A stretch of 64,000 nt of DNA from positions 1 to 64,000 of IMG/VR virus record IMGVR_UViG_3300024239_000015; one strand, given 5' to 3'. Shown here piece by piece: positions 4,407 to 50,232 of this stretch. A program made the position numbers and the translations under genes. The notes beneath the pieces were generated by a model, which was not told the DNA's origin, did not search any database, and saw only the letters and a program-made list of their open reading frames with translations. Numbering within the stretch: position 1 is the first letter of the stretch; every line of letters begins with the position of its first letter.

Positions 4407-7000
4407 TTCTGTTTCCTCGCTTCTTGACGTTTACGCGTCGTAAAACGACGACCACTACATTCCATCACGTGATTCACAAACAAGTAACTCCGACCGTTCC
4501 CACGTTTGACTACGTGTTTGTCCCACACGGCTTGGATGTCCATCGGGTTGTCAGCCGTCAGTAGTTTATACGCAATCGCTTTTTGTGCTGCAGGAGAGTT
4601 TTGCATCTCCAAGAAGTCCGCTGTGGCTTGAGGTCCAATCTTTGCAACCAGCAAACGGATTTCTGCTTCACCCAGTATCCGTGTCGGGTTTTCACGCCAC
4701 GGTTTACTGTTACGATCGTTCTGCGTGAGTTTCGCTAAGATCCCATAGTGCTGACGTTTGAAGCTGCTGCCCGCTGCAGCGTCATCGCCAATCTTCTCTA
4801 ACAACATCACGTACATACTACCAATCAACACAGGGTCTTTCGTCGTGTACTCTTTCCCAGCGTAATCCTTATACGTCACAGGACCGATAGGAATAGGAAA
4901 CGACTCTCTGAGCTGTTGGATTTGTGGAGCACCAATGTTAGGACTGTGGGGTGGGAGCAACAACCTCACCACAGGCTGGCTGACCGCAAACTCCGGATGG
5001 CGATGTTGGTGAATCTGCTCATTTAACTCTTTGAGCTTTTCAGCTGGACTGAGTTTGAAGCTTAAGTACTCCTCATATTGCAACGGAGAAGCAACCGAGT
5101 AATACGCCATCAAATACCGCCACGCATCGTCCACACGTCCTCGATCCATAAACTTGATCAAGTTCTGTCGCACCCACCAACTGGTTGCGTTGACGTAATG
5201 TTCGTAAATAATACCCGGATTCATTCGTTTGGTGACCGAGTCGCCACAGAAAACCAGATGTGCTCTACGTCCCCATTGGTCTATAGGCATATCTTCCCAT
5301 TTTCTGATATCTACCAATACCCCTTTCTTTTTGTCCAGTTATGTCGCTACCATAACCCGGTGTGCTAAGACACCCGCCCTTACTTTCATAAGGGAACAGA
5401 CTATATCAATCCCACAGCGGTACGGTTTATGTACCCTGGTTGGGCCTCTCGTTTGGGGCGGCCAATCGCTTGCCGCTCTACAGGGTGGTCCAGTCCCTTA
5501 GTCGTTGAACACATCCCATACCTGTAAATAGGGTTAGGGACTTCGATGCGGATTGCCCCGACGTTACTACAGTAACGCTCTATGTCTCTTTTACCATACC
5601 TGAGTAGTTAGTTCAGCCACCGTGGAGTGATGTAAACATCACTCGATCACTGTTTCCAGCACGGCTTGGTGTACATAGTTTCTAGGGTGTTCCCGTCAGT
5701 TAGATGAGTGGCATCTAAGAATTACTTCCTAGACGAACAAAGCCTTACCGCTCATTGAGCCATAAGTTCCGTTACCAAGTAAGCCTACAGCTTTTGAACC
5801 TACATTCGGTGTGTACTTGTAGGTGTATTTGATCTTTACCCACCAATCATCCAGAGGTGCAGCACGATACGTTCTCGTTACGATCGCTTTGGCATTCTTT
5901 GGATTATTCGGTAGGGCTTCTAGTGCAAGGAAACGTTCCAGTTCAGGTGTGGTTTGCACCCGTTCCGGTTGGTACTTTCCATTTCCTATACGCCGTACGT
6001 AATCTCGATACGTTTGGATGACCTCACTGTAAAACTCATCCTGCGCAGTTTGATACCGCTGTGGTTGAGTTTCCATCCCCACTGGCGTCGGTGGGGTTTG
6101 GTTTGTAAAGTCATGGAGTACTTCGATGTCAGTGACGATCGCACCACCTTTAGCGTACACGCGTTTATCGAACTTGTAGTCGATTTCCCGTAACGCTTTA
6201 AGCGACATTTGACATGGTCCTAAGAGTTCATCGTAAGGTCGCATGACAAACAGTAACCCATCGTCTCTTATTTTCTCCCCTACGTCTGGATACGGTTTGT
6301 AATTCTCATCGTCCCCATAAAGGTTTAACAAGAAGAACTTTTTACCATAACTACAGACAGCCTCTCCAAACGCCGTAGCGCGATTGGCTTTACACCACGT
6401 ATCGGAGGCAACGATACCGTCCTCGATGATCTCTGGGATCGTCATGAACGCAATATCGGTTTCTACCCCGTACATATACTCCCCATCGTCAGTGACGTTG
6501 GGAGAGTCTGCAAACACGTATCCTTTAGGGATAATGTCCCCTGGTTTAAATTTGTTAAAGCTGTTCTGTAACTGATCCGCTCTGTATTTAAACCCGAAGG
6601 TTTGGTGCGCACAGTGGTGTGTACGTAAAAGCACCATCCCTAAGGAATGGATTCCATTTTGTAGTTTCTCCATCTCCTCGTAGATCAGGATCGTCGTGGG
6701 GTTACTGCGAAATGGAAAGCCTCCTAGTTTCTTTGGAAACTTATGGATTACTTTTAACAACCGTCCGGTGGTAGGCATCGTTTGTTTAAAAGTAGTTTGT
6801 GCGTATTCAAACTCGTGTCCTGCGATCAAGTTAGGTCGCGTAGGACAATCCACCACTAAACTTTGTGCCTGATGACCTCCCCGCATGGATAAACGCGGGG
6901 AAGACGCACAGGCGATATAGTTTACTAAATCGGTGGTGTTCCCGAGCAATTGGGGATGCAGCTCGTTTTTAGACCTGTGTACCAAGGGTCTCAAAATCAT
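4400..7000 (-). CDS. Non-virion RNA polymerase beta-like subunit, C-terminal part (phiKZ gp71-73-like), two exons: about 7000-5771 and 5326-4400
   Basis: Exon 1 ends GSKAVGLLG(N); exon 2 starts KGVLVDIRKWEDMPID, rebuilding the beta motif GDK.AGRHGNKGV..I...EDMP; KRMNPG, GSMYVMLLEK and GEAEIR follow. Confidence 0.9.
5327..5773 (-). mobile_element. Group I intron without ORF in nvRNAP beta-C
   Basis: R element GTTCAACGAC (5501-5510), S element GATATAGTC (5399-5407), P3 GCCACTC/GAGAGGC, P2 with GTAA loop, P9 CCCTTAT-GAAA-GTAAGGG; 5' boundary uncertain (5770 or 5773). Confidence 0.88.
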
Positions 7001-12073: not shown

Positions 12074-12141
12074 GAAAACTTGTCGAGTGCTGAGGAACAT
12101 AGAAGAGGAGAGCGAAATGCTCTCCTCAGTATGTTGTTTAC

Positions 12142-15931: not shown

Positions 15932-16540
15932 TTACCCCAATGCCCCATTGAGCTCATCGGTGGTGTCAATCCCTTCTGCAAATCCAGCTACCATAACATC
16001 GATACTGTACCGAATGTCTAGTTTCTGTTGCGTACTTAAAGGAATCTCGTCGTCGTCCCCTACGACACAAACCCGTACTAAAGGTCCTTCGTCGTCAAAG
16101 TTGACTTGTCCACTGTAAACACGACAGTAGTCATCGTGGTCCCAACGAGACACACCCGGCTGTAGGTCGACATACCGCTCTCCAAACCCATGACAGCGTT
16201 GGTCGTGGTACACGTCCCGGATCTCAGGAGCCACCATCAACCACCGTACCATTTCTTGTGGAGCGTTCTGTACCTCTTCATACGTTGACAACCGATGGAT
16301 ACTGTTGACTTGTGTGAAGCTTTCCGTCCGAGCACGTAACGCGTCTGCAATCACTAACGCGTGTGAGTCAACCAAAGTTGACGCGTGTGCAATCGCTTGG
16401 TCGTACTGAGCCCGTCCAAGCTCAGTTAACCCACTGACGTAATCGTGTCGTTGTGTCTCTACGTACTGGAGTACGTTTTGATGTGGACGTCCGTAAGCCG
16501 CAGCATGTTGCAGCGCACGGCCTCCTTCTACCACTCGCAT
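15932..16540 (-). CDS. Conserved nucleus-block protein directly downstream of beta'-N
   Basis: ATG abuts the TAA of the reconstructed beta'-N exon 3 (GGAGG RBS inside that exon). Confidence 0.7.
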   Translation of the reverse strand: MRVVEGGRALQHAAAYGRPHQNVLQYVETQRHDYVSGLTELGRAQYDQAIAHASTLVDSHALVIADALRARTESFTQVNSIHRLSTYEEVQNAPQEMVRWLMVAPEIRDVYHDQRCHGFGERYVDLQPGVSRWDHDDYCRVYSGQVNFDDEGPLVRVCVVGDDDEIPLSTQQKLDIRYSIDVMVAGFAEGIDTTDELNGALG

Positions 16541-16804
16541 TTATACCTCCAGGTTTTTAAATTGCGCCAGTTGGTGGTCTGGGTCATACCGTTCTATAGG
16601 CAACTCAAACCGTTTTGCTGACGCTTCATCTCGATACAGCCAGTTAGCTATCGTAGCAATAGTTGCACTGTGTAGTGCAATTACACGACTGACTTTACGA
16701 GGCGTACCGTGGTCTAATACCCCTTTGTGAGGCGCTAGTTTCCTAAGCGCTTCAAATTGCTCCCTGTCTAATGCGACAAGGGCATTTAATGCATCACCGT
16801 CAAA
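16541..16804 (-). CDS. beta'-N exon 3 (87 aa, not in the ORF track)
   Basis: TTT GAC GGT GAT GCA = FDGDA... open to TAA at 16541; preceded by the intron terminal G at 16805. Confidence 0.9.
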   Translation of the reverse strand, partial: FDGDALNALVALDREQFEALRKLAPHKGVLDHGTPRKVSRVIALHSATIATIANWLYRDEASAKRFELPIERYDPDHQLAQFKNLEV

Positions 16805-19800
16805 CCATGTATGTTCGGAGAGTTCGCAAGGCTCTCCCGCGTCTCACGCTTCACAGCGTGGGTACGCAGCTGTAGGCTTTCCCTACAGTGCAGACTATAC
16901 CATCTACTCTCCTTTATAGAAGAGCAGCACCACATTTCGAAGTACCTTGAGTTTTCACTCTAGCTTGTACCCCTACTCCCCGCTACGGGACAGTCGTTGA
17001 ACACACTCCGTAATCTGTGTAAACAAACCCTTAGGAGCTTCGCTGCTGATTGACCATTTTACCTTTCGGTTTCTTTTTCATCCCCTTAGCGCCGTTTCCG
17101 GTTTCTTTTCAGCATAGGGCATCTCTACGATTGTTTCTGGGTTTCCCCACCTGACGTTCAGAAGACTCGCGCCGTCCTAGTGATCTCCGTGTACCGCACT
17201 TGCTGCCAAGTACTGTAGTTTACTGTTTCCAGCACGGTGTTGGTTGCAGAGCTTTAGGCTTTTCCAGCGTTTAGTGGTGTACGCATCCACCCTCGCGGAT
17301 AGATGGGACTTTAACATACTAACTAACGTTAACGTATTCGATTTGATATATTGACCATCTACCCCCGTTGATGGACATTCCCCTTTGTACCGTATTTCTT
17401 CGAGCTCCCACTTCCGCACAAAAGTCCAGAGTCGACGCGTAGTGCTTAACTTCGCCGGTCAACTTATTGGTTACTTTTATCGGAAAGGCCGGACGTCGCG
17501 AGTTAGGTGACATTTTCTTAGGCTTTCTCTTAACGACAGTTCCCACAGAACCTTCCTTCTCGTCAAGATGTTTTGCTAGGAATAAACCCCTGACTCTAGT
17601 CCCCCTATTTATCGACTGCCATATCGAACTCGTAGACACATTGAAGTATCTGGCAGCTTCCCCGTAGCTCTCGAAGATATAAACTTCTTTTCCATCCTTA
17701 GAAGTCAATACAACTTCGCGCGGGGCACCATTTGGTTTCTCGCCGACATTACTGGAATCGATTTGTTTCCAACTCGAGTCCGCGTAACGCACGTTGTATT
17801 TTTTCAAGAACGGAGTTTGCTGTGTGGAGTTCAGATAAACGTGTAACCTACTCTGGGACGCTTTCAGCCACGCGGCTGCTTTGTTTAAACCCAAGAACGA
17901 ATTAACTTCCTGCGTGGTTAAGTCTAAGACCTCTACAGGACGATTATCTTTCTTCAGCCCTAACTCGTAAGCGTGCCATAAGTTTCTTTTCCTATCGACC
18001 CATTCTAGGTTACTGGCTCTGTTGTTAAATTTATCGCCATCGATGTGATTCGTGACGTAGTGGTCGTGTTCTTTGTGATGGAACGTTTCGGCGACAAGAC
18101 GATGGTGTGTCATCGTGCCTTTACCGCGTATGTTCATCACGTTATACCCGAAATGTGAGTTGAAGTACGCTAAGGGACAATAATCTAACAAAACATCAAT
18201 TACTATCCCTTCTTCGGAAATCACAATCCGAGGAATCTGGGGGTGGTGGTAATACTTAGGGTATCTTTTCGATTCTATCAAACCTTCGCGCATCTTTCAT
18301 TTCCTTCTCATGCTAGTCGCATAAGATAGATGCATGTTAAGTTAATTAATGTTATTTCATCGCAGTTCATGCCGGTTATACAGTGAGTGGATACACTGAC
18401 TGAGTTTATAGCCGGGTCTTTCTTTATCCTGCTGATAAAGAATTGCTGCATGGATAGTTCATGCAGTGTGGGCTTTGCTTTCACGTAGGGCGCGACACCT
18501 ACGCAGTTCTTAAAAGAACGTCCCCAGAATTACCTGGGATAAAAGACTATATCTTCATCCGTTATAAGTAGGGATAACGGAGCTCCTCGTTTCGCATAGT
18601 TTTAAACTACTTAGCGCTAGGCTAACCACCTGACCTTTCGATCGCTTGCGGGCTACTCTACTCCCTTCTCTTTCTTATTGCAAGAAAGCGGTTTCGATAG
18701 TCGTTGAACACATTCCGTAATGTATACTGCTGATACACCCTTAGGAACTTCGCTGCTGATAGACCCAGACTCTTTGTTTTCAAACCGTCACGTAGACCGT
18801 TTCCAGTTGCGTTGTGGTAAAGAGTTTTAGATAGATCGTCCCAGCAGTTAGAGGAGTTTGGCGTTACTGTTACCAGTAAAGGAAACCTAAGTCAATTTCG
18901 ATGGAAAATACACGGGATACCACGGATCTCTCGATGTTCGTGGGGTTGTGTACCGATGGGGTTATAAACACCAACGACGTAAGGGGAGTCGCTGATTAAC
19001 TCATCAAAGAGTGCATCCAGCTCTGGGTTGTAAGTGTGAGCGTTTTCAGACAGGAATTTCTCAATCTGATTCGGACCCCACCCACGTTTCAAAAGCTTAT
19101 TGGTGAGCTGTGCTTGCAATACAGCAATCGCAGTCGTCCACGGAATCTCCAGCTCTGAGTATAAGTGCCATCCTGTCAAGGAGTTCACGACGTTACGGAA
19201 GCTGTAGTTTGCACGTGTACCGAAGATGTGTTTACGGAACCATCCCTTCTTCCCACCTAGAATGTTCTTGTACAGGTTGTTGTAGTACGCACTGAGTTGT
19301 ACCACACACACCGTTGCACGACTCTCTGCTTTCTTTAACCGTACGTTCTGGTACGCTTCCCCTAAGTCGAGAATGGTGTAGGCTGCATCAATCGCGTCTA
19401 CCATTCCGAAGTCGGCGTAGGTACCCACCGCTGTTTTCTCTGTAATAAACGCAATCTTGTTTGGGATTGGTAGATATGGAGTAAACACCAAGTCACGGTT
19501 CTCACGCACCAGCTCCATGACGTTGTCTTTGCGATCGGGTGAGCCTGAGTACAATCGGTTATCCACGAGGATACTTAAGTACAGGTCAAAGTGATCAAAG
19601 AAGTTATTCAACCCCCGTTGAAACCCATACGCTTCCAGTTGTTCTCCAAACGCACTATGACCACTCGGGATACGGTAGTAGGGGTCACATAACCACCGCA
19701 TGATACTGATCCCGTTCTTCTTAAACAGTTGGTCTAAGATGTACCAGATTGTTGGGTTAATCAACGCTTTCACGCCCCGTGGTGCGCGTATCCATAACGT

Positions 19801-20097
19801 AGACTCGATTGGACGCTCGAGAATACTCATGGGAACGGTACCACACAGCTCACAGCGCAGTTTAATGCTTGCTGCATACTGCCCTGTGGTATGCCCACAC
19901 CCACACGACGGGAGGACGCTGACTTGGTCTCCATCGTACTCTGTCCGTATTAAATTGGACAGAAATTGTTTTGCTTGCACGGTACGTGCGTCGATGTCAT
20001 TGATACACACCGGTGGCACGGACTGTGCGCCGTACATTTCCACGTAATCGACGAGTTCTAGATAGACGCCATCGTCGTTTTCGTTTGTTTCTACCAC
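16541..20097 (-). CDS. Non-virion RNA polymerase beta'-like subunit, N-terminal part (phiKZ gp55-like), three exons: 20097-18895, 18472-18359, 16804-16541; 526 aa when spliced
   Basis: Zn finger C.CG..C..C; KKGWFRKHIFGTR; spliced junctions read IFHRN|PTLH and GMNCD|FDGDALN, restoring the NADFDGD-type active-site motif. Confidence 0.92.
16805..18358 (-). mobile_element. Group I intron 2 of beta'-N, carrying an HNH endonuclease in the P1 loop
   Basis: 5' site GAT| (U) pairs with IGS GTCCCA; P4 GCTG/CAGC; P3 CACCAC/GTGGTG; R GTTCAACGAC (16993-17002); S GTATAGTC (16893-16900); ends in G. Confidence 0.9.
17319..18293 (-). CDS. Intron-encoded HNH homing endonuclease with NUMOD1-type DNA-binding repeats (I-HmuI-like)
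   Basis: HRLVAETF..VTNHIDGDKFNNRASNLEWV; C-terminal repeats such as FESYGEAARYFNVSTSSI; AAGGA RBS. Confidence 0.92.
   Translation of the reverse strand: MREGLIESKRYPKYYHHPQIPRIVISEEGIVIDVLLDYCPLAYFNSHFGYNVMNIRGKGTMTHHRLVAETFHHKEHDHYVTNHIDGDKFNNRASNLEWVDRKRNLWHAYELGLKKDNRPVEVLDLTTQEVNSFLGLNKAAAWLKASQSRLHVYLNSTQQTPFLKKYNVRYADSSWKQIDSSNVGEKPNGAPREVVLTSKDGKEVYIFESYGEAARYFNVSTSSIWQSINRGTRVRGLFLAKHLDEKEGSVGTVVKRKPKKMSPNSRRPAFPIKVTNKLTGEVKHYASTLDFCAEVGARRNTVQRGMSINGGRWSIYQIEYVNVS
18359..18472 (-). CDS. beta'-N exon 2 (114 nt, 38 aa, not in the ORF track)
   Basis: Translates PTLHELSMQQFFISRIKKDPAINSVSVSTHCITGMNCD, matching the beta' segment (R.)PTLH...N.D. Confidence 0.9.
18473..18894 (-). mobile_element. 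Group I intron 1 of beta'-N (422 nt, no ORF)
   Basis: 5' site GAAAT| pairs with GTTTC including the U-G wobble; R GTTCAACGAC (18700-18709); S AAGATATAGTC (18545-18555); ends AAAG before CCC ACA CTG. Confidence 0.9.
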
Positions 20098-20206: not shown

Positions 20207-22003
20207 TTACCAGCGAGACTGGAAGCTTTGACCGTTGTTAAACGTCGGTGCGTTGTAGCCAGTGCTGAATGCATTTGCAGACAGACCGCCAGACAACACG
20301 TCTACGTTTGCACGAGGTACGACGCGAGTTTCGTTTTGTGTGTACTCTGGAGTCAGAGCCGCACCTACTTCACCCAACGCAGTCACCAGGGCTAACAGAA
20401 CGCGATCGTTTAACATCACTTCAGTAGCGTAGTCAGTGATCACCACGTCACCTAAGTATTTCTTCTGCAGCTGACACAGTACAGTCAGACGTTCTTCGGT
20501 AGAGGCACGACGTGGATCGTAACACTCATCGAAACGGTAGACTTGGGTTAAGTCTTTGTCACCTTCCATAGCAGAGATTGCCATGTGGTCGAAGTCACGG
20601 ATGTCGGACTTCACAGAGTGGCCATTGGTGTAGTAACCTAACGGAACCCGTGTAGGGACGACTTTACCGATAGGACCAGAACCTAAGCGCTGGAACACTT
20701 CAGAGAACTTACCAGAGGTCAGGTTATCACACGCTTGTGTGAAACGCTTCACTGCCGTGTCAGAACCCGCACAGGCGTCACGTAACAGACTCAGTAACCA
20801 GGTGTCTTCACCTGTTTCTGGGATGTGTACTACGACCGCTACTTCTGGGTGAACGAATTCAGCGAAGAAGCGGTTTACGTCGAACGTAGGTTCGTTAGCA
20901 CCCACACGAGTACCTGCTGGCAGTAAACCTTCAGCGGCCATTTCAGCAGACAGCACGTCTAAGCTACGCTCAGCGCCATGGCGGTGGAACGTGTTGATGT
21001 ACTGACGGCTACGGATTGGTTCAGCAGCTAACGCTAATGCCAACACCATGTGCTCAGGCGTGGTCACACCGGCGTTCAGTGACAGATCGGTGACAACCAT
21101 ACGCGCTTGGAAGTGCTGAGTAGTAGCACGAGCTGGCTGGTATGGCGTTTCGATCATGCGTGGGCCTACGTAGACTAAGTCTAAGAAGGCAGACAGCTGA
21201 GCCATGTTACGAGATTGACCCGCTAACAAACCACCATTGGTGTTGGTGTTCACCAACGCAACAGAAGCAGTGATGTCACGACGTACGGGTAAACCACCTG
21301 CTGTTTTAGCAGGAGCTGACGCTAACTCTACACGGCTACGTAATTGGAAGCCTGCTTGGTTTGCACCTTTCATAGAAACGATGTACTGACCTGCTTCCTG
21401 TAACGCTGCTTTTAAGTTGTACTGTAAAGCAGACATTGCACGGACTAACACGTCGCGTACGGCTTTGGCATCGCCTGGAGCAGTTTCACGGGGTACTACA
21501 CTGAAGCCTACGAATGACGCCGTTGGCGGTAAACCTGCTAACGCTTTAGACACCAGTGGTTGGAACTGAGGATCACGTGTTAAGTCACCTACGGTTTGTG
21601 GGTACAGTAACTCACGTTGACCTAAGTTGATGCTGTCGTTGCGTTTGGCTAACATCGGCAGTTCTTCTGCAGTACCTGCTAATAACATCAGGTACACCGC
21701 AACTTGCTTTTTGTACTCACCCACGATCGCTACAGCTGACACTGGGATCAGAGTCGTTTGTTGATCCAGTTCCAGCATGGTGAACTTGAAGTTGTCACGG
21801 TTGGCAGAGTCTACCATTGGCTTCAGAGTTTCTAAGTAGCCAGACAGCACTTGACTGTGTGGGCTTAACGGCATCACACCGCTGGTTTGTGCTGCAAACA
21901 TAGCAGCTAAGTTTTGAGCGACTGGTTGTTCACCAGTGAACGTTTGTTGTTGTTCTGCTTGTGCCTGAGTCGACTTCTGGCTGGCAGTGTTCAGTTCTTT
22001 CAT
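20207..22003 (-). CDS. chmA: Chimallin, major nuclear shell protein (phiKZ gp54-like)
   Basis: 598 aa directly upstream of beta'-N; Q-rich flexible N-terminus; RVPLGYY..DIRDFDHMAI-type motifs; strong high-expression codon bias. Confidence 0.82.
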   Translation of the reverse strand: MKELNTASQKSTQAQAEQQQTFTGEQPVAQNLAAMFAAQTSGVMPLSPHSQVLSGYLETLKPMVDSANRDNFKFTMLELDQQTTLIPVSAVAIVGEYKKQVAVYLMLLAGTAEELPMLAKRNDSINLGQRELLYPQTVGDLTRDPQFQPLVSKALAGLPPTASFVGFSVVPRETAPGDAKAVRDVLVRAMSALQYNLKAALQEAGQYIVSMKGANQAGFQLRSRVELASAPAKTAGGLPVRRDITASVALVNTNTNGGLLAGQSRNMAQLSAFLDLVYVGPRMIETPYQPARATTQHFQARMVVTDLSLNAGVTTPEHMVLALALAAEPIRSRQYINTFHRHGAERSLDVLSAEMAAEGLLPAGTRVGANEPTFDVNRFFAEFVHPEVAVVVHIPETGEDTWLLSLLRDACAGSDTAVKRFTQACDNLTSGKFSEVFQRLGSGPIGKVVPTRVPLGYYTNGHSVKSDIRDFDHMAISAMEGDKDLTQVYRFDECYDPRRASTEERLTVLCQLQKKYLGDVVITDYATEVMLNDRVLLALVTALGEVGAALTPEYTQNETRVVPRANVDVLSGGLSANAFSTGYNAPTFNNGQSFQSRW

Positions 22004-22221: not shown

Positions 22222-23397
22222 ATGGTATGTGCGAAAACGTCTTCAAGACTCATGTTTACCAAGGAGCAGATTGTGCTGACTTTATTTTTGTCTCCGAGTG
22301 TAAAGGCTTACGGAGGCGTCCGTCTCGGACAGTATCCGTATATAGAAAGACGATTCAGTGAAAACTTTCGAACGGTAAGGGACCATTACCGGACGAGAAA
22401 CCTAGCGGTGAAGAACACACACTTCCTCGTGACTGCATTAGACTCTTTACCGATTGCAGATACAGGTTCACCACATCGCTTTGCAGACGTAGCTGCATCC
22501 TTAGCTCCCAACTTACTGAATCGGTTTGGAGTAGGAAGTGACCGTTACGTAGGAAAGTTTCAAGCCACCCAACGGTTCTTTGGAAGTAACGTCTACGAGT
22601 ACCTGTACTTAACACAAAGTTACTACGACGAGTTTACACTCAAACCGAGCGAGTGGATGTACTTACGTCCTATCCAAGTGCTGAGCCATCCTCGTACAGA
22701 TTTTGATTACTCTATCCTCGCAGGACAGATTACCACCGAAGAATCAGGGCACGCGTTTATTACCATTGACTTTGGTTTACTGGCATTCCAGTACCACTGT
22801 TGGCGTAAAGAACACTTGAGGAAAAACGGTGGAGTCTTTTTGGGGTCAGTACGACAGTTTCTAGTGCAATACCCATTAGCGAACTTAATCCCAAGTTACA
22901 ACAACATCGCATGGTACAACACGGTGTTTCGTAGTGCCATAGGGTACACGCCTGCGTTATCAGTCAATCGTCCGCCTCTCGCGATTCCTGACTCGTACAC
23001 CTACGTGAGGGAAACTGCAGCACAGTTTCACGCAAACTTAACGCGTACAGGACGAGCTTTGCAAGCAGAAGCGTTACTCCAGTGGATACCGAGTGTGGAC
23101 ATGTATGCAAGTAATGCAGCTGAGGACACCTACTGTTACCCTACAAGAGTGCACTCCACTCCCGCAGAAGTCGCGCGATGGTTTTGTCAACTCGATTGGT
23201 GTGAAACGGTTTTTGGAATTCTGTTTCAAAACGAAGCGATCAAGAACAACCGTGCGTTAGTGAACGAGTACTTAAAAGACTACCGTCGGTTAGTGAATAC
23301 AAAACTGTTACAGGACGTTGCGATGCCGTTAGATGCACGCGACTACTTAAACAGAAAGTTAGACACGATACTCGCGTACATAACGGAGGGAGCGTAG
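22222..23397 (+). CDS. Conserved jumbo-phage protein (phiKZ gp52-like position)
   Basis: 391-aa ORF divergent from chmA, as in phiKZ-like genomes. Confidence 0.6.
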   Translation: MVCAKTSSRLMFTKEQIVLTLFLSPSVKAYGGVRLGQYPYIERRFSENFRTVRDHYRTRNLAVKNTHFLVTALDSLPIADTGSPHRFADVAASLAPNLLNRFGVGSDRYVGKFQATQRFFGSNVYEYLYLTQSYYDEFTLKPSEWMYLRPIQVLSHPRTDFDYSILAGQITTEESGHAFITIDFGLLAFQYHCWRKEHLRKNGGVFLGSVRQFLVQYPLANLIPSYNNIAWYNTVFRSAIGYTPALSVNRPPLAIPDSYTYVRETAAQFHANLTRTGRALQAEALLQWIPSVDMYASNAAEDTYCYPTRVHSTPAEVARWFCQLDWCETVFGILFQNEAIKNNRALVNEYLKDYRRLVNTKLLQDVAMPLDARDYLNRKLDTILAYITEGA

Positions 23398-23459
23398 TGC
23401 TCCCTCCTTATGCTTGTCATTTTATGGACTGTTTAGAATTTAACCAAAAGGGTGTGTGT

Positions 23460-24706: not shown

Positions 24707-24739
24707 CATACGAGGGAGGCGTAAAGCCTCCCTCTATGC
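24707..24739. terminator. Convergent-junction hairpin flanked by CATA/TATGC
   Basis: cata-c-gagggaggc-gtaaa-gcctccctc-tatgc. Confidence 0.65.
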
Positions 24740-33644: not shown

Positions 33645-33677
33645 CATAAAGAGGGAGGCTCGAGCCTCCCTCTATGC
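33645..33677. terminator. Convergent-junction hairpin flanked by CATA/TATGC
   Basis: cataaa-gagggaggc-tcga-gcctccctc-tatgc. Confidence 0.65.
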
Positions 33678-38970: not shown

Positions 38971-39004
38971 GCATAGAGGGAGGCGCTTGCCTCCCTCTTT
39001 ATGC
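38971..39004. terminator. Convergent-junction hairpin flanked by GCATA/TATGC
   Basis: gcata-gagggaggc-gctt-gcctccctc-tttatgc. Confidence 0.65.
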
Positions 39005-50198: not shown

Positions 50199-50232
50199 CA
50201 TACAGGGAGAGCTTCGCGCTCTCCCTGTATGC
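50199..50232. terminator. Convergent-junction hairpin flanked by CATA/TATGC
   Basis: cata-cagggagagc-ttcgc-gctctccctg-tatgc. Confidence 0.7.

What the first reader, a model, noticed from the sequence alone, without database searches (positions are those of the whole stretch)
17300..18358. HNH homing endonuclease looped out of P1, with its stop codon in the P1 extension
Seen in sequence: the intron's first nucleotides (TAACAT-TAATTAAC) pair with GTTAGTTAG-T-ATGTTA, which contains the HNH TAG stop. The IGS GTCCCA follows and pairs with exon TGCGAT. The ~1-kb ORF therefore sits in L1. A TATG motif (18320-18323) and hairpin precede its RBS. Established: intron HNH nucleases in jumbo-phage RNAP genes can cut intron-less alleles, and PhiPA3 gp210 has been described as mediating interference against phiKZ. 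Inference: it targets the intron-less NxD/FDGD site of co-infecting phages, and translation may be coupled to splicing.
Basis: partly seen in the sequence, partly recalled or inferred. Interest (0 to 1): 0.65.

Follow-up and report, generated by a model that had tools for sequence, protein, structure and literature searches.

The report
HNH endonuclease gene inside intron P1 loop
A self-splicing group I intron splits the catalytic DFDGD motif of a jumbo phage's RNA polymerase gene and carries an HNH homing-endonuclease gene in its first stem-loop; this is real, but phiKZ and its relatives have the same layout, so it is a new member of a known kind.

Summary
On the minus strand, a 1554-nt group I intron (18358-16805) splits the non-virion RNA polymerase beta'-N gene between NCD and FDGD. 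The phage is an uncultured, chimallin-encoding jumbo phage of 233 kb.

- **ORF position:** A 324-aa HNH_3 + NUMOD1 ORF (18293-17319) lies in the loop closed by a long-range P1 extension.
- **Stop codon:** The UAG (17321-17319) sits in the 3' strand of this helix, 9 nt before the guide sequence.
- **Correction to P1:** By comparison with relatives, the exon-guide pairing is only GAU x GUC.
- **Promoter idea:** The TATG is present but shows no sign of being a promoter.
- **Relatives:** ORF-less paralogues in the same genome have a short P1-extension hairpin at the same place. A 37%-identical HNH sits in the same loop at the same site in another viral contig. phiKZ-like, EL-like and SPN3US-like phages carry homologous HNH genes in introns of the same gene.
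- **Unproven:** Homing or interference against intron-less alleles is plausible but untested. Coupling of translation to splicing is not supported; mutual exclusion is the likelier reading.

The parts
18359..18472 (-). Exon 2 of the nvRNAP beta'-N gene (38 aa, PTLHEL...GMNCD). It is shorter than the open frame suggests, because intron 1 ends at G18473.
   Evidence: The three exons map to phrog_2987 positions 2-380, 374-418 and 419-477. Intron-less homologues read ...RNP(S/T)L....
16805..18358 (-). Group I intron 2 (1554 nt). The 5' splice site is U18359|G18358 and the 3' splice site is G16805|U16804.
   Evidence: RF00028 match at 17221-16870: 29.3 bits, E = 6.6e-5. The core is shared with five other introns of the genome. 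Intron-less homologues read NCD directly followed by FDGD.
17307..17309 (-). Guide sequence GUC, pairing with exon GAU 18361-18359 (P1 proper, with a U.G pair at the splice site). It is part of the conserved GUCC at 17309-17306.
   Evidence: fold. GUCC is conserved in 11 relatives, whose 5' exons end in GAU or GACU.
18336..18354 (-). P1 extension, 5' strand. It follows the 4-nt GAAA internal loop.
17312..17333 (-). P1 extension, 3' strand. It encodes the last codons V-N-V-S and the UAG stop (17321-17319). G17319/U17318 and C17328 are bulged.
17319..18293 (-). HNH homing-endonuclease ORF, 324 aa plus stop, filling loop L1. An AAGGA ribosome-binding site lies at 18306-18302.
   Evidence: Pfam HNH_3 (27.4 bits, cut-off 24.8) and NUMOD1 (42.1 bits, cut-off 22.8). 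phrog_59, E = 3e-27. I-HmuI (1U3E), E = 1.7e-5, with His83, Asn95 and Asn104 aligned to His75, Asn87 and Asn96. 37% identical to the ORF at the same site in L021.
18320..18323 (-). TATG motif 27 nt upstream of the ATG. It is a possible but unsupported phiKZ-type start motif.
   Evidence: No upstream GC-rich hairpin, unlike the genome's recurrent hairpin-TATG cassettes.
17284..17305 (-). P2: a 9-bp stem with a GCGA tetraloop, immediately after GUCC.
   Evidence: Ten of 11 relatives show a 6-9-bp hairpin here with different sequences, GNRA-capped in 9.
17310..17315 (-). Candidate P10 strand GUUAAA, complementary to the first six exon-3 bases UUUGAC (16804-16799). It overlaps the proximal P1-extension helix.
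   Evidence: 6 bp, -3.3 kcal/mol. It is not clearly conserved in relatives, so it is tentative.
16805..17283 (-). Ribozyme core P3-P9, with a large P5 extension and P9.x hairpins.
   Evidence: The 21-nt P7-region pattern is shared with 15 viral-contig loci.
16541..16804 (-). Exon 3 (87 aa, FDGDALNAL..., plus stop).
18473..18894 (-). Intron 1 of the same gene (ORF-less group I intron, 422 nt).
   Evidence: RF00028 47.2 bits over 18903-18523. The 3' end is extended to 18473 by homologue alignment.
18895..20097 (-). Exon 1 of the nvRNAP beta'-N gene, directly downstream of the chimallin gene (20207-22003).
   Evidence: phrog_2987 E = 2e-109, and Pfam Chimallin_Phikzvirus for the neighbouring gene.

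Best explanation
This is a mobile group I intron of the phage IA-like type. It is inserted between the codons for D and F of the catalytic N(A/C)DFDGD motif, in the non-virion RNA polymerase beta'-N gene of a chimallin-encoding jumbo phage.

**Structure.** The ribozyme recognises its 5' splice site through a minimal P1, exon GAU paired with guide GUC. A small A-rich internal loop follows. P1 then continues as a 19-bp extension formed between intron nucleotides 5-23 and the 22 nt that end 2 nt before the guide sequence. The whole HNH gene (I-HmuI-like: HNH_3 plus NUMOD1 DNA-binding modules) is the roughly 1-kb terminal loop of that helix. Its last five codons and the UAG form the 3' strand. P2 and the catalytic core follow directly.

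**Inferred function.**
- The helix brings the splice site, guide sequence and core together despite the 1-kb insert.
- The enzyme nicks or cuts intron-less alleles near the D|F junction, which promotes homing and possibly harms competing phages.
- A ribosome finishing the ORF would unwind the P1 extension and cover the guide sequence, so translation and splicing of one RNA molecule are mutually exclusive.
- In a nucleus-forming phage, splicing can finish inside the ribosome-free phage nucleus before export.
For: **Shown here**
- Exon pieces map to contiguous positions of one RNAP profile, 418|419 at this junction. Four intron-less contigs read LNCD directly followed by FDGDAL.
- Splice-site rules are met: U before the intron and G at its end.
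- RF00028 matches the core. Five further introns in the genome share that core.
- The fold gives P1, the P1 extension and P2, with a shuffle fraction of 0.008.
- ORF-less paralogues have a P1-extension hairpin at the same place with unrelated sequence. For the DNA polymerase intron z = -3.3, and for the vRNAP beta' intron z = -5.7.
- The phiKZ-like gp55/gp56 intron has a long-range helix enclosing its 1021-nt L1, z = -5.0.
- In nine further ORF-bearing relatives examined, the ORF ends between about 15 nt before the guide sequence and just after P2.
- HNH domains and catalytic residues are present. An intact orthologue, 37% identical, sits at the same site.

**From the literature**
- PhiPA3 gp210 nicks the intron-less allele and reduces phiKZ fitness (PMC11620839).
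- The phage nucleus separates transcription from translation (PMC12908238).
Against: - The Rfam score for this intron is below the gathering threshold (29.3 against 50).
- The P1 extension is AT-rich. A site inside the ORF pairs with the intron's 5' end almost as well (-15.3 against -15.7 kcal/mol).
- The closest ORF-bearing homologue at the same site (L021), and also L023 and the EL-like intron, show no significant P1 extension. The helix is therefore not universal.
- P1 proper has only 3 bp.
- P10 is not conserved in relatives.
- No RNA data exist: only DNA runs from one subsurface-metagenome study hold the sequence. Splicing, expression and nuclease activity are all untested.
- ONT-cappable-seq did not detect splicing of the predicted phiKZ introns under the conditions used (bioRxiv 10.1101/2023.10.13.562163).
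Confidence: 0.8

Rival explanations
1. The long-range pairing is chance complementarity in AT-rich sequence. The ORF lies between the splice site and the guide sequence, but no stable P1 extension forms. P1 would then be held together by protein or by tertiary contacts only.
For: An alternative partner inside the ORF is nearly as good in energy. L021, L023 and the EL-like intron show no significant helix.
Against: The helix is in the exact register expected for a coaxial P1 extension, and only 0.8% of register-free shuffles match it. Equivalent helices with different sequences occur in two paralogues, and L019 and L011 show weaker ones (shuffle fractions 0.054 and 0.088). The phiKZ-like intron has a strong one.
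Confidence: 0.12
2. The intron no longer splices, or the HNH ORF is a free-standing or domesticated gene. On this view the beta'-N protein is made as separate polypeptides, with the catalytic motif split between them.
For: Splicing of the predicted phiKZ introns was not seen by ONT-cappable-seq (bioRxiv 10.1101/2023.10.13.562163). Jumbo-phage RNAP genes are naturally split into several polypeptides (PMC7598289).
Against: Exon 2 has no start codon or ribosome-binding site of its own, and exon 3 begins exactly at FDGD. The splice-site U and G are kept. The ribozyme core, P2 and P9 are conserved among six introns of the genome. Purified phiKZ gp55 runs at 56 kDa (PMC4666361), which by my own estimate fits the two exons joined better than the 423-aa first exon alone in the phiKZ-like record.
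Confidence: 0.05
3. The HNH is expressed from its own intron-internal late promoter (TATG at 18323-18320) as an independent transcript. Its expression would then be timed independently of the host gene.
For: A TATG(C) lies 27 nt upstream of the ATG, which is a sensible leader length. TATG is the phiKZ late start motif (PMC4666361). TATG is about 2-fold enriched upstream of genes here.
Against: TATG is necessary but not sufficient in phiKZ, and it is frequent (PMC4666361). Its enrichment here equals that of other AT-rich 4-mers. The genome's distinctive TATG sites follow a GC-rich hairpin (70 of 872 sites against 13 of 872 random controls), and the intron site has none.
Confidence: 0.2

Closest known systems
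phiKZ gp55/gp56 intron (seen here in Phikzvirus PA02, locus L029) and its counterparts in EL-like (L030) and SPN3US-like SaP7 (L028) phages
   Same: The host gene is the same (nvRNAP beta'-N, next to chimallin) and the same catalytic motif is interrupted. Each has an RF00028 intron (75.6, 53.8 and 51.9 bits). The HNH ORFs are homologous at 25-30% identity. Each ORF starts soon after the 5' splice site and ends at the guide sequence or P2. PA02 has a long-range P1 extension enclosing a 1021-nt L1. These introns were predicted in the literature (PMC11512511, citing Mesyanzhinov 2002 and Ceyssens 2014).
   Different: The insertion point differs by 3-6 nt: N|ADFDGD in PA02 and NA|DFDGD in the EL-like phage, against NCD|FDGD here. 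The guide sequences differ. In PA02 the stop codon lies in the P2 tetraloop, and in the EL-like phage it abuts the guide sequence; here it is inside the P1 extension. The host phage is only about 42% identical in beta'-N to any sequenced phage.
IMG/VR contig 3300027776_000011 (locus L021)
   Same: The insertion site is identical (NAD|FDGD). The ribozyme lineage is the same, with a 30-nt identical P7 segment. An orthologous 334-aa HNH (37% identity over the full length) sits in the same loop, 67 nt after the splice site.
   Different: There is no significant P1 extension and no P2 hairpin. The stop codon lies 13 nt before the guide sequence.
PhiPA3 gp210 intron (PMC11620839)
   Same: It is an HNH, I-HmuI-like nicking endonuclease in a group I intron of a chimallivirus RNA polymerase gene, at conserved catalytic-region aspartates. 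It has been shown to nick the intron-less allele and to give a competitive advantage.
   Different: It lies in the virion RNAP beta-subunit gene (gp211/209, the homologue of phiKZ gp178), not in the nvRNAP beta' gene at DFDGD. No activity data exist for the present enzyme.
I-HmuI (SPO1 DNA polymerase intron; PDB 1U3E)
   Same: The HNH_3 catalytic core aligns at E = 1.7e-5 with the general-base His and both Asn conserved. It also has NUMOD-type DNA-binding modules and is encoded in a phage intron.
   Different: I-HmuI has 174 aa against 324 aa here. Asp74 of I-HmuI is Asn82 here. The host gene is different.
Nuclear S1389 group I introns with endonuclease genes in P1 (PMC8395846)
   Same: The endonuclease gene is inserted as an extension of P1.
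   Different: Those are eukaryotic rDNA introns carrying His-Cys box enzymes. The ribozymes are unrelated.

Membership tests
Group I intron (Rfam RF00028) | Conserved catalytic core (P3-P9) recognised by the covariance model | tested here: inconclusive
   29.3 bits, E = 6.6e-5, below the 50-bit gathering score. The model misplaces the 5' half because of the large P5 extension. The core aligns to five other introns of the genome, one above the threshold and two at 47 bits.
Group I intron (Rfam RF00028) | 5' exon ends in U paired with G of a guide sequence, and the intron ends in G | tested here: met
   U18359.G17309 and omega-G16805. The same GUCC element occurs in 11 relatives.
Group I intron (Rfam RF00028) | Removal restores a continuous, conserved reading frame | tested here: met
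   phrog_2987 positions 418|419. Intron-less homologues read NCD directly followed by FDGD.
Group I intron (Rfam RF00028) | Self-splicing with guanosine | not testable with these tools
   No RNA run holds the sequence.
HNH_3 / I-HmuI-type intron endonuclease | HNH_3 domain above the Pfam cut-off, with catalytic His and Asn residues | tested here: met
   27.4 bits against a cut-off of 24.8. His83, Asn95 and Asn104 align to His75, Asn87 and Asn96 of 1U3E.
HNH_3 / I-HmuI-type intron endonuclease | NUMOD-type DNA-binding module(s) C-terminal to the nuclease | tested here: met
   NUMOD1, 42.1 bits against a cut-off of 22.8, residues 193-226.
HNH_3 / I-HmuI-type intron endonuclease | Site-specific nicking or cleavage of the intron-less allele | not testable with these tools
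   Candidate substrates exist. L025 and L027 match 22 of the 23 bases around the junction.
Endonuclease gene in L1 enclosed by a P1 extension | ORF lies between the 5' splice site and the guide sequence, closed by a helix coaxial with P1 | tested here: met
   The same is found in ORF-less paralogues and in the phiKZ-like intron.
phiKZ-type late promoter | TATG with G as the start, plus further undefined determinants | tested here: inconclusive
   TATG is present, but it is not specific and lacks the hairpin that accompanies this genome's recurrent TATG sites.

The most novel reading that the evidence does not exclude
This ribozyme lineage carries an almost invariant minimal guide sequence (GUCC, pairing only with GAU or GACU). 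It is found after Asp codons in four different polymerase genes: nvRNAP beta', vRNAP beta', an RNAP beta-like gene and DNA polymerase. The ORF, when present, always fills L1 and ends at or within the guide sequence or P2.

The novel reading has two parts. First, the 3-nt guide sequence lets the intron colonise new catalytic Asp codons by reverse splicing. Second, the overlap between the ORF's end and P1/P2 is a conserved switch that makes translation and splicing mutually exclusive, and nucleus-forming phages resolve that conflict by compartmentation.
Probability: 0.2. Interest if true: 0.55.

Novelty: new member of a known kind. Interest (0 to 1): 0.3.

Why it matters
The finding adds a divergent, uncultured subsurface jumbo phage to the chimalliviruses whose RNA polymerase active-site codons are occupied by endonuclease-bearing introns.

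It also gives an explicit structural model, which may apply to phiKZ gp56 as well, for how a 1-kb gene is tolerated inside P1. That model predicts that translation and splicing are mutually exclusive. This can be tested and is relevant to how nucleus-forming phages express intron-encoded weapons such as PhiPA3 gp210.

It does not reveal a new kind of element.

Tried and rejected
- **Megablast against phage records:** no match.
- **The search for related loci with the HNH:** returned only an identical contig, with 0 differences over 8972 nt, so there was no covariation to use.
- **Metagenome scan with a 30-nt P7 pattern:** returned only the window's own contig and the L021 contig.
- **Sequencing runs:** only 4 DNA runs from one subsurface-metagenome study, and no RNA. 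Splicing and transcript starts could not be observed.
- **Rfam placement of P1:** the model puts its 'P1' at 17221. I rejected this. The region belongs to the P5 extension, and the true P4 5' strand is the conserved UGCUGG-type element just after P2/P3.
rejected in favour of GUC(C) followed by P2.
- **P10 (GUUAAA x UUUGAC):** present here but not clearly conserved in relatives, so kept as tentative.
- **Start-codon sequestering hairpin around 18333-18285:** predicted, but z = -1.7, so not relied on.
- **TATG as a promoter:** no specific support.
- **P1 extension in L021, L023 and the EL-like intron:** not significant.
- **Joined sequences:** Exons were always handled separately by reference.
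Full report
**Context**

The window is the first 64 kb of a 233,377-bp viral record with direct terminal repeats, rated 100% complete. The sequence is held by DNA runs of one subsurface-metagenome study.

ORF 20207-22003 (minus strand) is a chimallin, the phage-nucleus shell protein (Pfam PF25677, phrog_4795). The gene directly downstream matches phrog_2987 ('RNA polymerase beta subunit') in three pieces that cover profile positions 2-380, 374-418 and 419-477. By its position next to chimallin and its DFDGD motif, it is the counterpart of phiKZ gp55. That protein is the N-terminal beta'-like subunit of the non-virion RNA polymerase and contains the catalytic double-psi beta-barrel (PMC4666361). 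The best hit to any sequenced phage is only about 42% identical, and megablast finds nothing.

**Gene structure**

All features are on the minus strand.

| Feature | Coordinates | Note |
|---|---|---|
| Exon 1 | to 18895 | |
| Intron 1 | 18894-18473 | no ORF; RF00028 47.2 bits |
| Exon 2 | 18472-18359 | 38 aa, ending ...GMNCD |
| Intron 2 | 18358-16805 | 1554 nt |
| Exon 3 | 16804-16541 | begins FDGDALNAL... |

The open frame makes exon 2 look 55 aa long. However, intron-less homologues read ...(G/N)R(N/P)P(S/T)L..., and the profile numbering places the junction at N|P. The 50 nt after the end of the Rfam match are therefore further P9-type hairpins of intron 1.

Four jumbo-phage contigs without the intron (L024-L027) read LNCD directly followed by FDGDAL. 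L025 and L027 match this phage's two exon ends at 22 of the 23 bases around the junction. I compared the exons separately by reference. I did not build or search a joined spliced sequence.

**The observation**

- Intron nucleotides 5-18 (UAACAU, then UAAUUAAC) pair with GUUAGUUA, a GU bulge, and AUGUUA at 17327-17312.
- A two-strand fold adds five more pairs, 18340-18336 with 17333-17329, after a one-base bulge. That gives 19 bp.
- The same fold gives P1 as GAU (18361-18359) paired with GUC (17309-17307), an internal loop of GAAA against AA, and a 9-bp P2 with a GCGA loop (17305-17284).
- The ORF stop UAG is 17321-17319. U and A are paired, and G is in the bulge. Codons V-N-V-S and the stop form the 3' strand.
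- The distance from the stop codon to the guide G is 9 nt.

Against mononucleotide shuffles of the two 35-nt segments, the duplex has z = -3.1, and 0.8% of shuffles reach it. As a caution, when the whole intron is scanned, a segment inside the ORF pairs with the 5' end nearly as well (-15.3 against -15.7 kcal/mol). Energy alone is therefore not decisive.

**Comparative support**

The genome holds six RF00028 matches. They lie in an RNAP beta-like gene (5377-5767), the nvRNAP beta'-N gene (two introns), DnaB, DNA polymerase and the vRNAP beta'-N gene. Only intron 2 carries an ORF.

The DNA polymerase and vRNAP beta' introns share three elements with intron 2: the GUCCC element, a GNRA-capped P2 and the P4 strand. 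At the position of the 1-kb insert they have hairpins instead:
- DNA polymerase intron: a 6-bp hairpin with a hexaloop, z = -3.3.
- vRNAP beta' intron: a 6+7-bp helix enclosing 41 nt, z = -5.7.

The sequences of these helices are unrelated, so the helix is conserved rather than its sequence.

A 21-nt P7 pattern retrieved 15 loci from IMG/VR.
- L019 has an ORF-less intron at the same NAD|FDGD site, with a 9-bp P1 extension and a 120-nt L1.
- L021 has an intron at the same site with a 334-aa HNH that is 37% identical over its full length. It starts 67 nt after the splice site; here the distance is 65 nt.
- In L011, L012 and L013 the ORF runs through the guide sequence into P2.

All 5' exons end in GAU or GACU.

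L021, L023 and the EL-like intron show no significant P1 extension, so this helix is common but not obligatory.

**Cultured relatives**

The best tblastn hits of the HNH (25-30% identity) are ORFs in SPN3US-like, EL-like and phiKZ-like phages. In all three groups the ORF lies between a roughly 420-480-aa RNAP fragment that follows chimallin and a 59-72-aa fragment. An RF00028 match directly follows the ORF, at 51.9, 53.8 and 75.6 bits.

The downstream fragments begin at or just before DFDGD. The junctions are N|ADFDGD in phiKZ-like PA02 and NA|DFDGD in the EL-like phage.

In PA02, a long-range helix encloses a 1021-nt L1 (z = -5.0; 0 of 500 shuffles reach it). The ORF there crosses the guide sequence and stops in the P2 GUAA tetraloop.

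The phiKZ introns around gp55/gp56, gp72 and gp179 have been predicted since the genome paper (PMC11512511; bioRxiv 10.1101/2023.10.13.562163). The latter study did not see them spliced under its conditions.

**The enzyme**
- Pfam HNH_3 (residues 64-104) and NUMOD1 (193-226) both pass their cut-offs.
- phrog_59 'HNH endonuclease' matches at E = 3e-27.
- I-HmuI (1U3E) aligns at E = 1.7e-5. His83, Asn95 and Asn104 sit at the positions of His75, Asn87 and Asn96. Asn82 replaces Asp74.
- The genome contains no second copy.

Relatives of this type that have been characterised are nicking enzymes (I-HmuI; PhiPA3 gp210, PMC11620839). That this protein nicks the intron-less D|F region is inference.

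**Expression**

TATG (18323-18320) lies 27 nt before the ATG, and an AAGGA ribosome-binding site is at 18306-18302. [quoted passage not shown]

In this genome, TATG is 2.0-fold enriched at -60 to -15 of 241 crudely called genes. AT-rich 4-mers in general show the same enrichment.

A distinct class does exist. It consists of palindromic cassettes of CATA, a GC-rich hairpin, then TATG(C). Of 872 TATG sites, 70 have a strong upstream hairpin, against 13 of 872 random positions. The intron's TATG has no such hairpin, so a promoter there is possible but unsupported.

The predicted local structure that would pair the AUG with an upstream GCAUCU is not significant (z = -1.7).

**Mechanism**

Shown or directly read from the sequence: the ORF is the terminal loop of P1, its 3' end is one strand of the P1 extension, and the guide sequence and P2 follow within 9 nt.

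Inferred:
1. The helix keeps the splice site next to the guide sequence and the core.
2. A terminating ribosome, whose footprint reaches about 12-15 nt downstream (general knowledge), would open the helix and cover the guide sequence. One RNA molecule can therefore be spliced or translated at a given time, but not both.
3. Because chimalliviruses transcribe inside a ribosome-free nucleus (PMC12908238), splicing can precede export. The HNH would then be translated from the exported excised intron, from unspliced RNA, or from a transcript of its own.
4. The enzyme must re-enter a phage nucleus to act, as discussed for gp210 (PMC11620839).

**Population data**

Only contigs of DNA runs were available, and they are probably the source samples. 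The breaks in the contigs that carry the stretch within 16832-17002 are repeats shared with the paralogous introns.

Two minor contigs remain unexplained:
- One has 88% identity over 17217-17310 and joins 17310 directly to 18433.
- The other leaves the reference at 16795, 9 nt inside exon 3.

They may reflect related strains with other intron states. They could not be read, so they prove nothing.

**Verdict**

The core observation is confirmed, with a corrected guide sequence and P2 and a longer helix.
- Novelty: new member of a known kind.
- Interest: modest. The useful products are an explicit P1-loop model shared with phiKZ gp56, and the note that one ribozyme lineage with a GAU-specific minimal guide sequence occupies Asp codons of four polymerase genes.

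Noticed in passing
Genome-wide; in the window e.g. 12101-12130, 23382-23409, 24710-24735, 33648-33673, 37628, 38975-39000, 50202-50228: There are palindromic cassettes of CATA, a GC-rich hairpin (often GAGGGAGG.../...CCTCCCTC) and TATG(C), readable on both strands between genes. Of 872 TATG sites, 70 have a strong upstream hairpin, against 13 of 872 random positions. They look like terminator hairpins fused to a phiKZ-type TATG start motif.
   Followed up: partly
window 18473-18894 (minus strand): Intron 1 of the same gene extends 50 nt beyond the Rfam match, to G18473. Exon 2 is therefore only 114 nt (38 aa), not the 55 aa that the open frame suggests.
   Followed up: yes
window 5377-5767 (minus strand); genome 86051-86357, 174242-174571, 204017-204368: Four more ORF-less group I introns interrupt an RNAP beta-like gene (phrog_3295), the vRNAP beta'-N gene (GAD|NDGD), DnaB and DNA polymerase. 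That makes six introns in replication and transcription genes of one phage.
   Followed up: partly
window 17306-17309; loci L009-L023; genome introns at 204017 and 86051: One ribozyme lineage keeps the guide element GUCC and sits after GAU (or GACU) Asp codons in four different genes: nvRNAP beta', vRNAP beta', an RNAP beta-like gene (GD|KGVF) and DNA polymerase (D|LDV). The fourth guide base never pairs with the exon. This suggests spread to new Asp codons with a 3-nt P1.
   Followed up: partly
window 17217-17310 joined to 18433; window 16766-16795: Two minor contigs appear in the DNA runs. One is an 88%-identical piece that joins the base before the guide sequence directly to a point inside exon 2, at depth 77 against about 2060. 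The other leaves the reference 9 nt inside exon 3, at depth 4.6 against 31. They may be related strains with other intron states, but this is unresolved.
   Followed up: partly
L019 (oriented), within the 120-nt L1 of the ORF-less intron at NAD|FDGD: L1 contains GAGGAG followed 9 nt later by an AUG and a very short frame. This may be a remnant of a lost endonuclease gene's ribosome-binding site and start codon.
   Followed up: no
window 15932-16543 (minus strand): The next gene (202 aa, phrog_3254, function unknown) starts at an ATG that shares its A with the last base of the TAA stop of exon 3 (TAAATG). An equivalent gene of about 190-215 aa follows the short exon in SaP7 and in the EL-like phage; the order in PA02 is less clear.
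   Followed up: no
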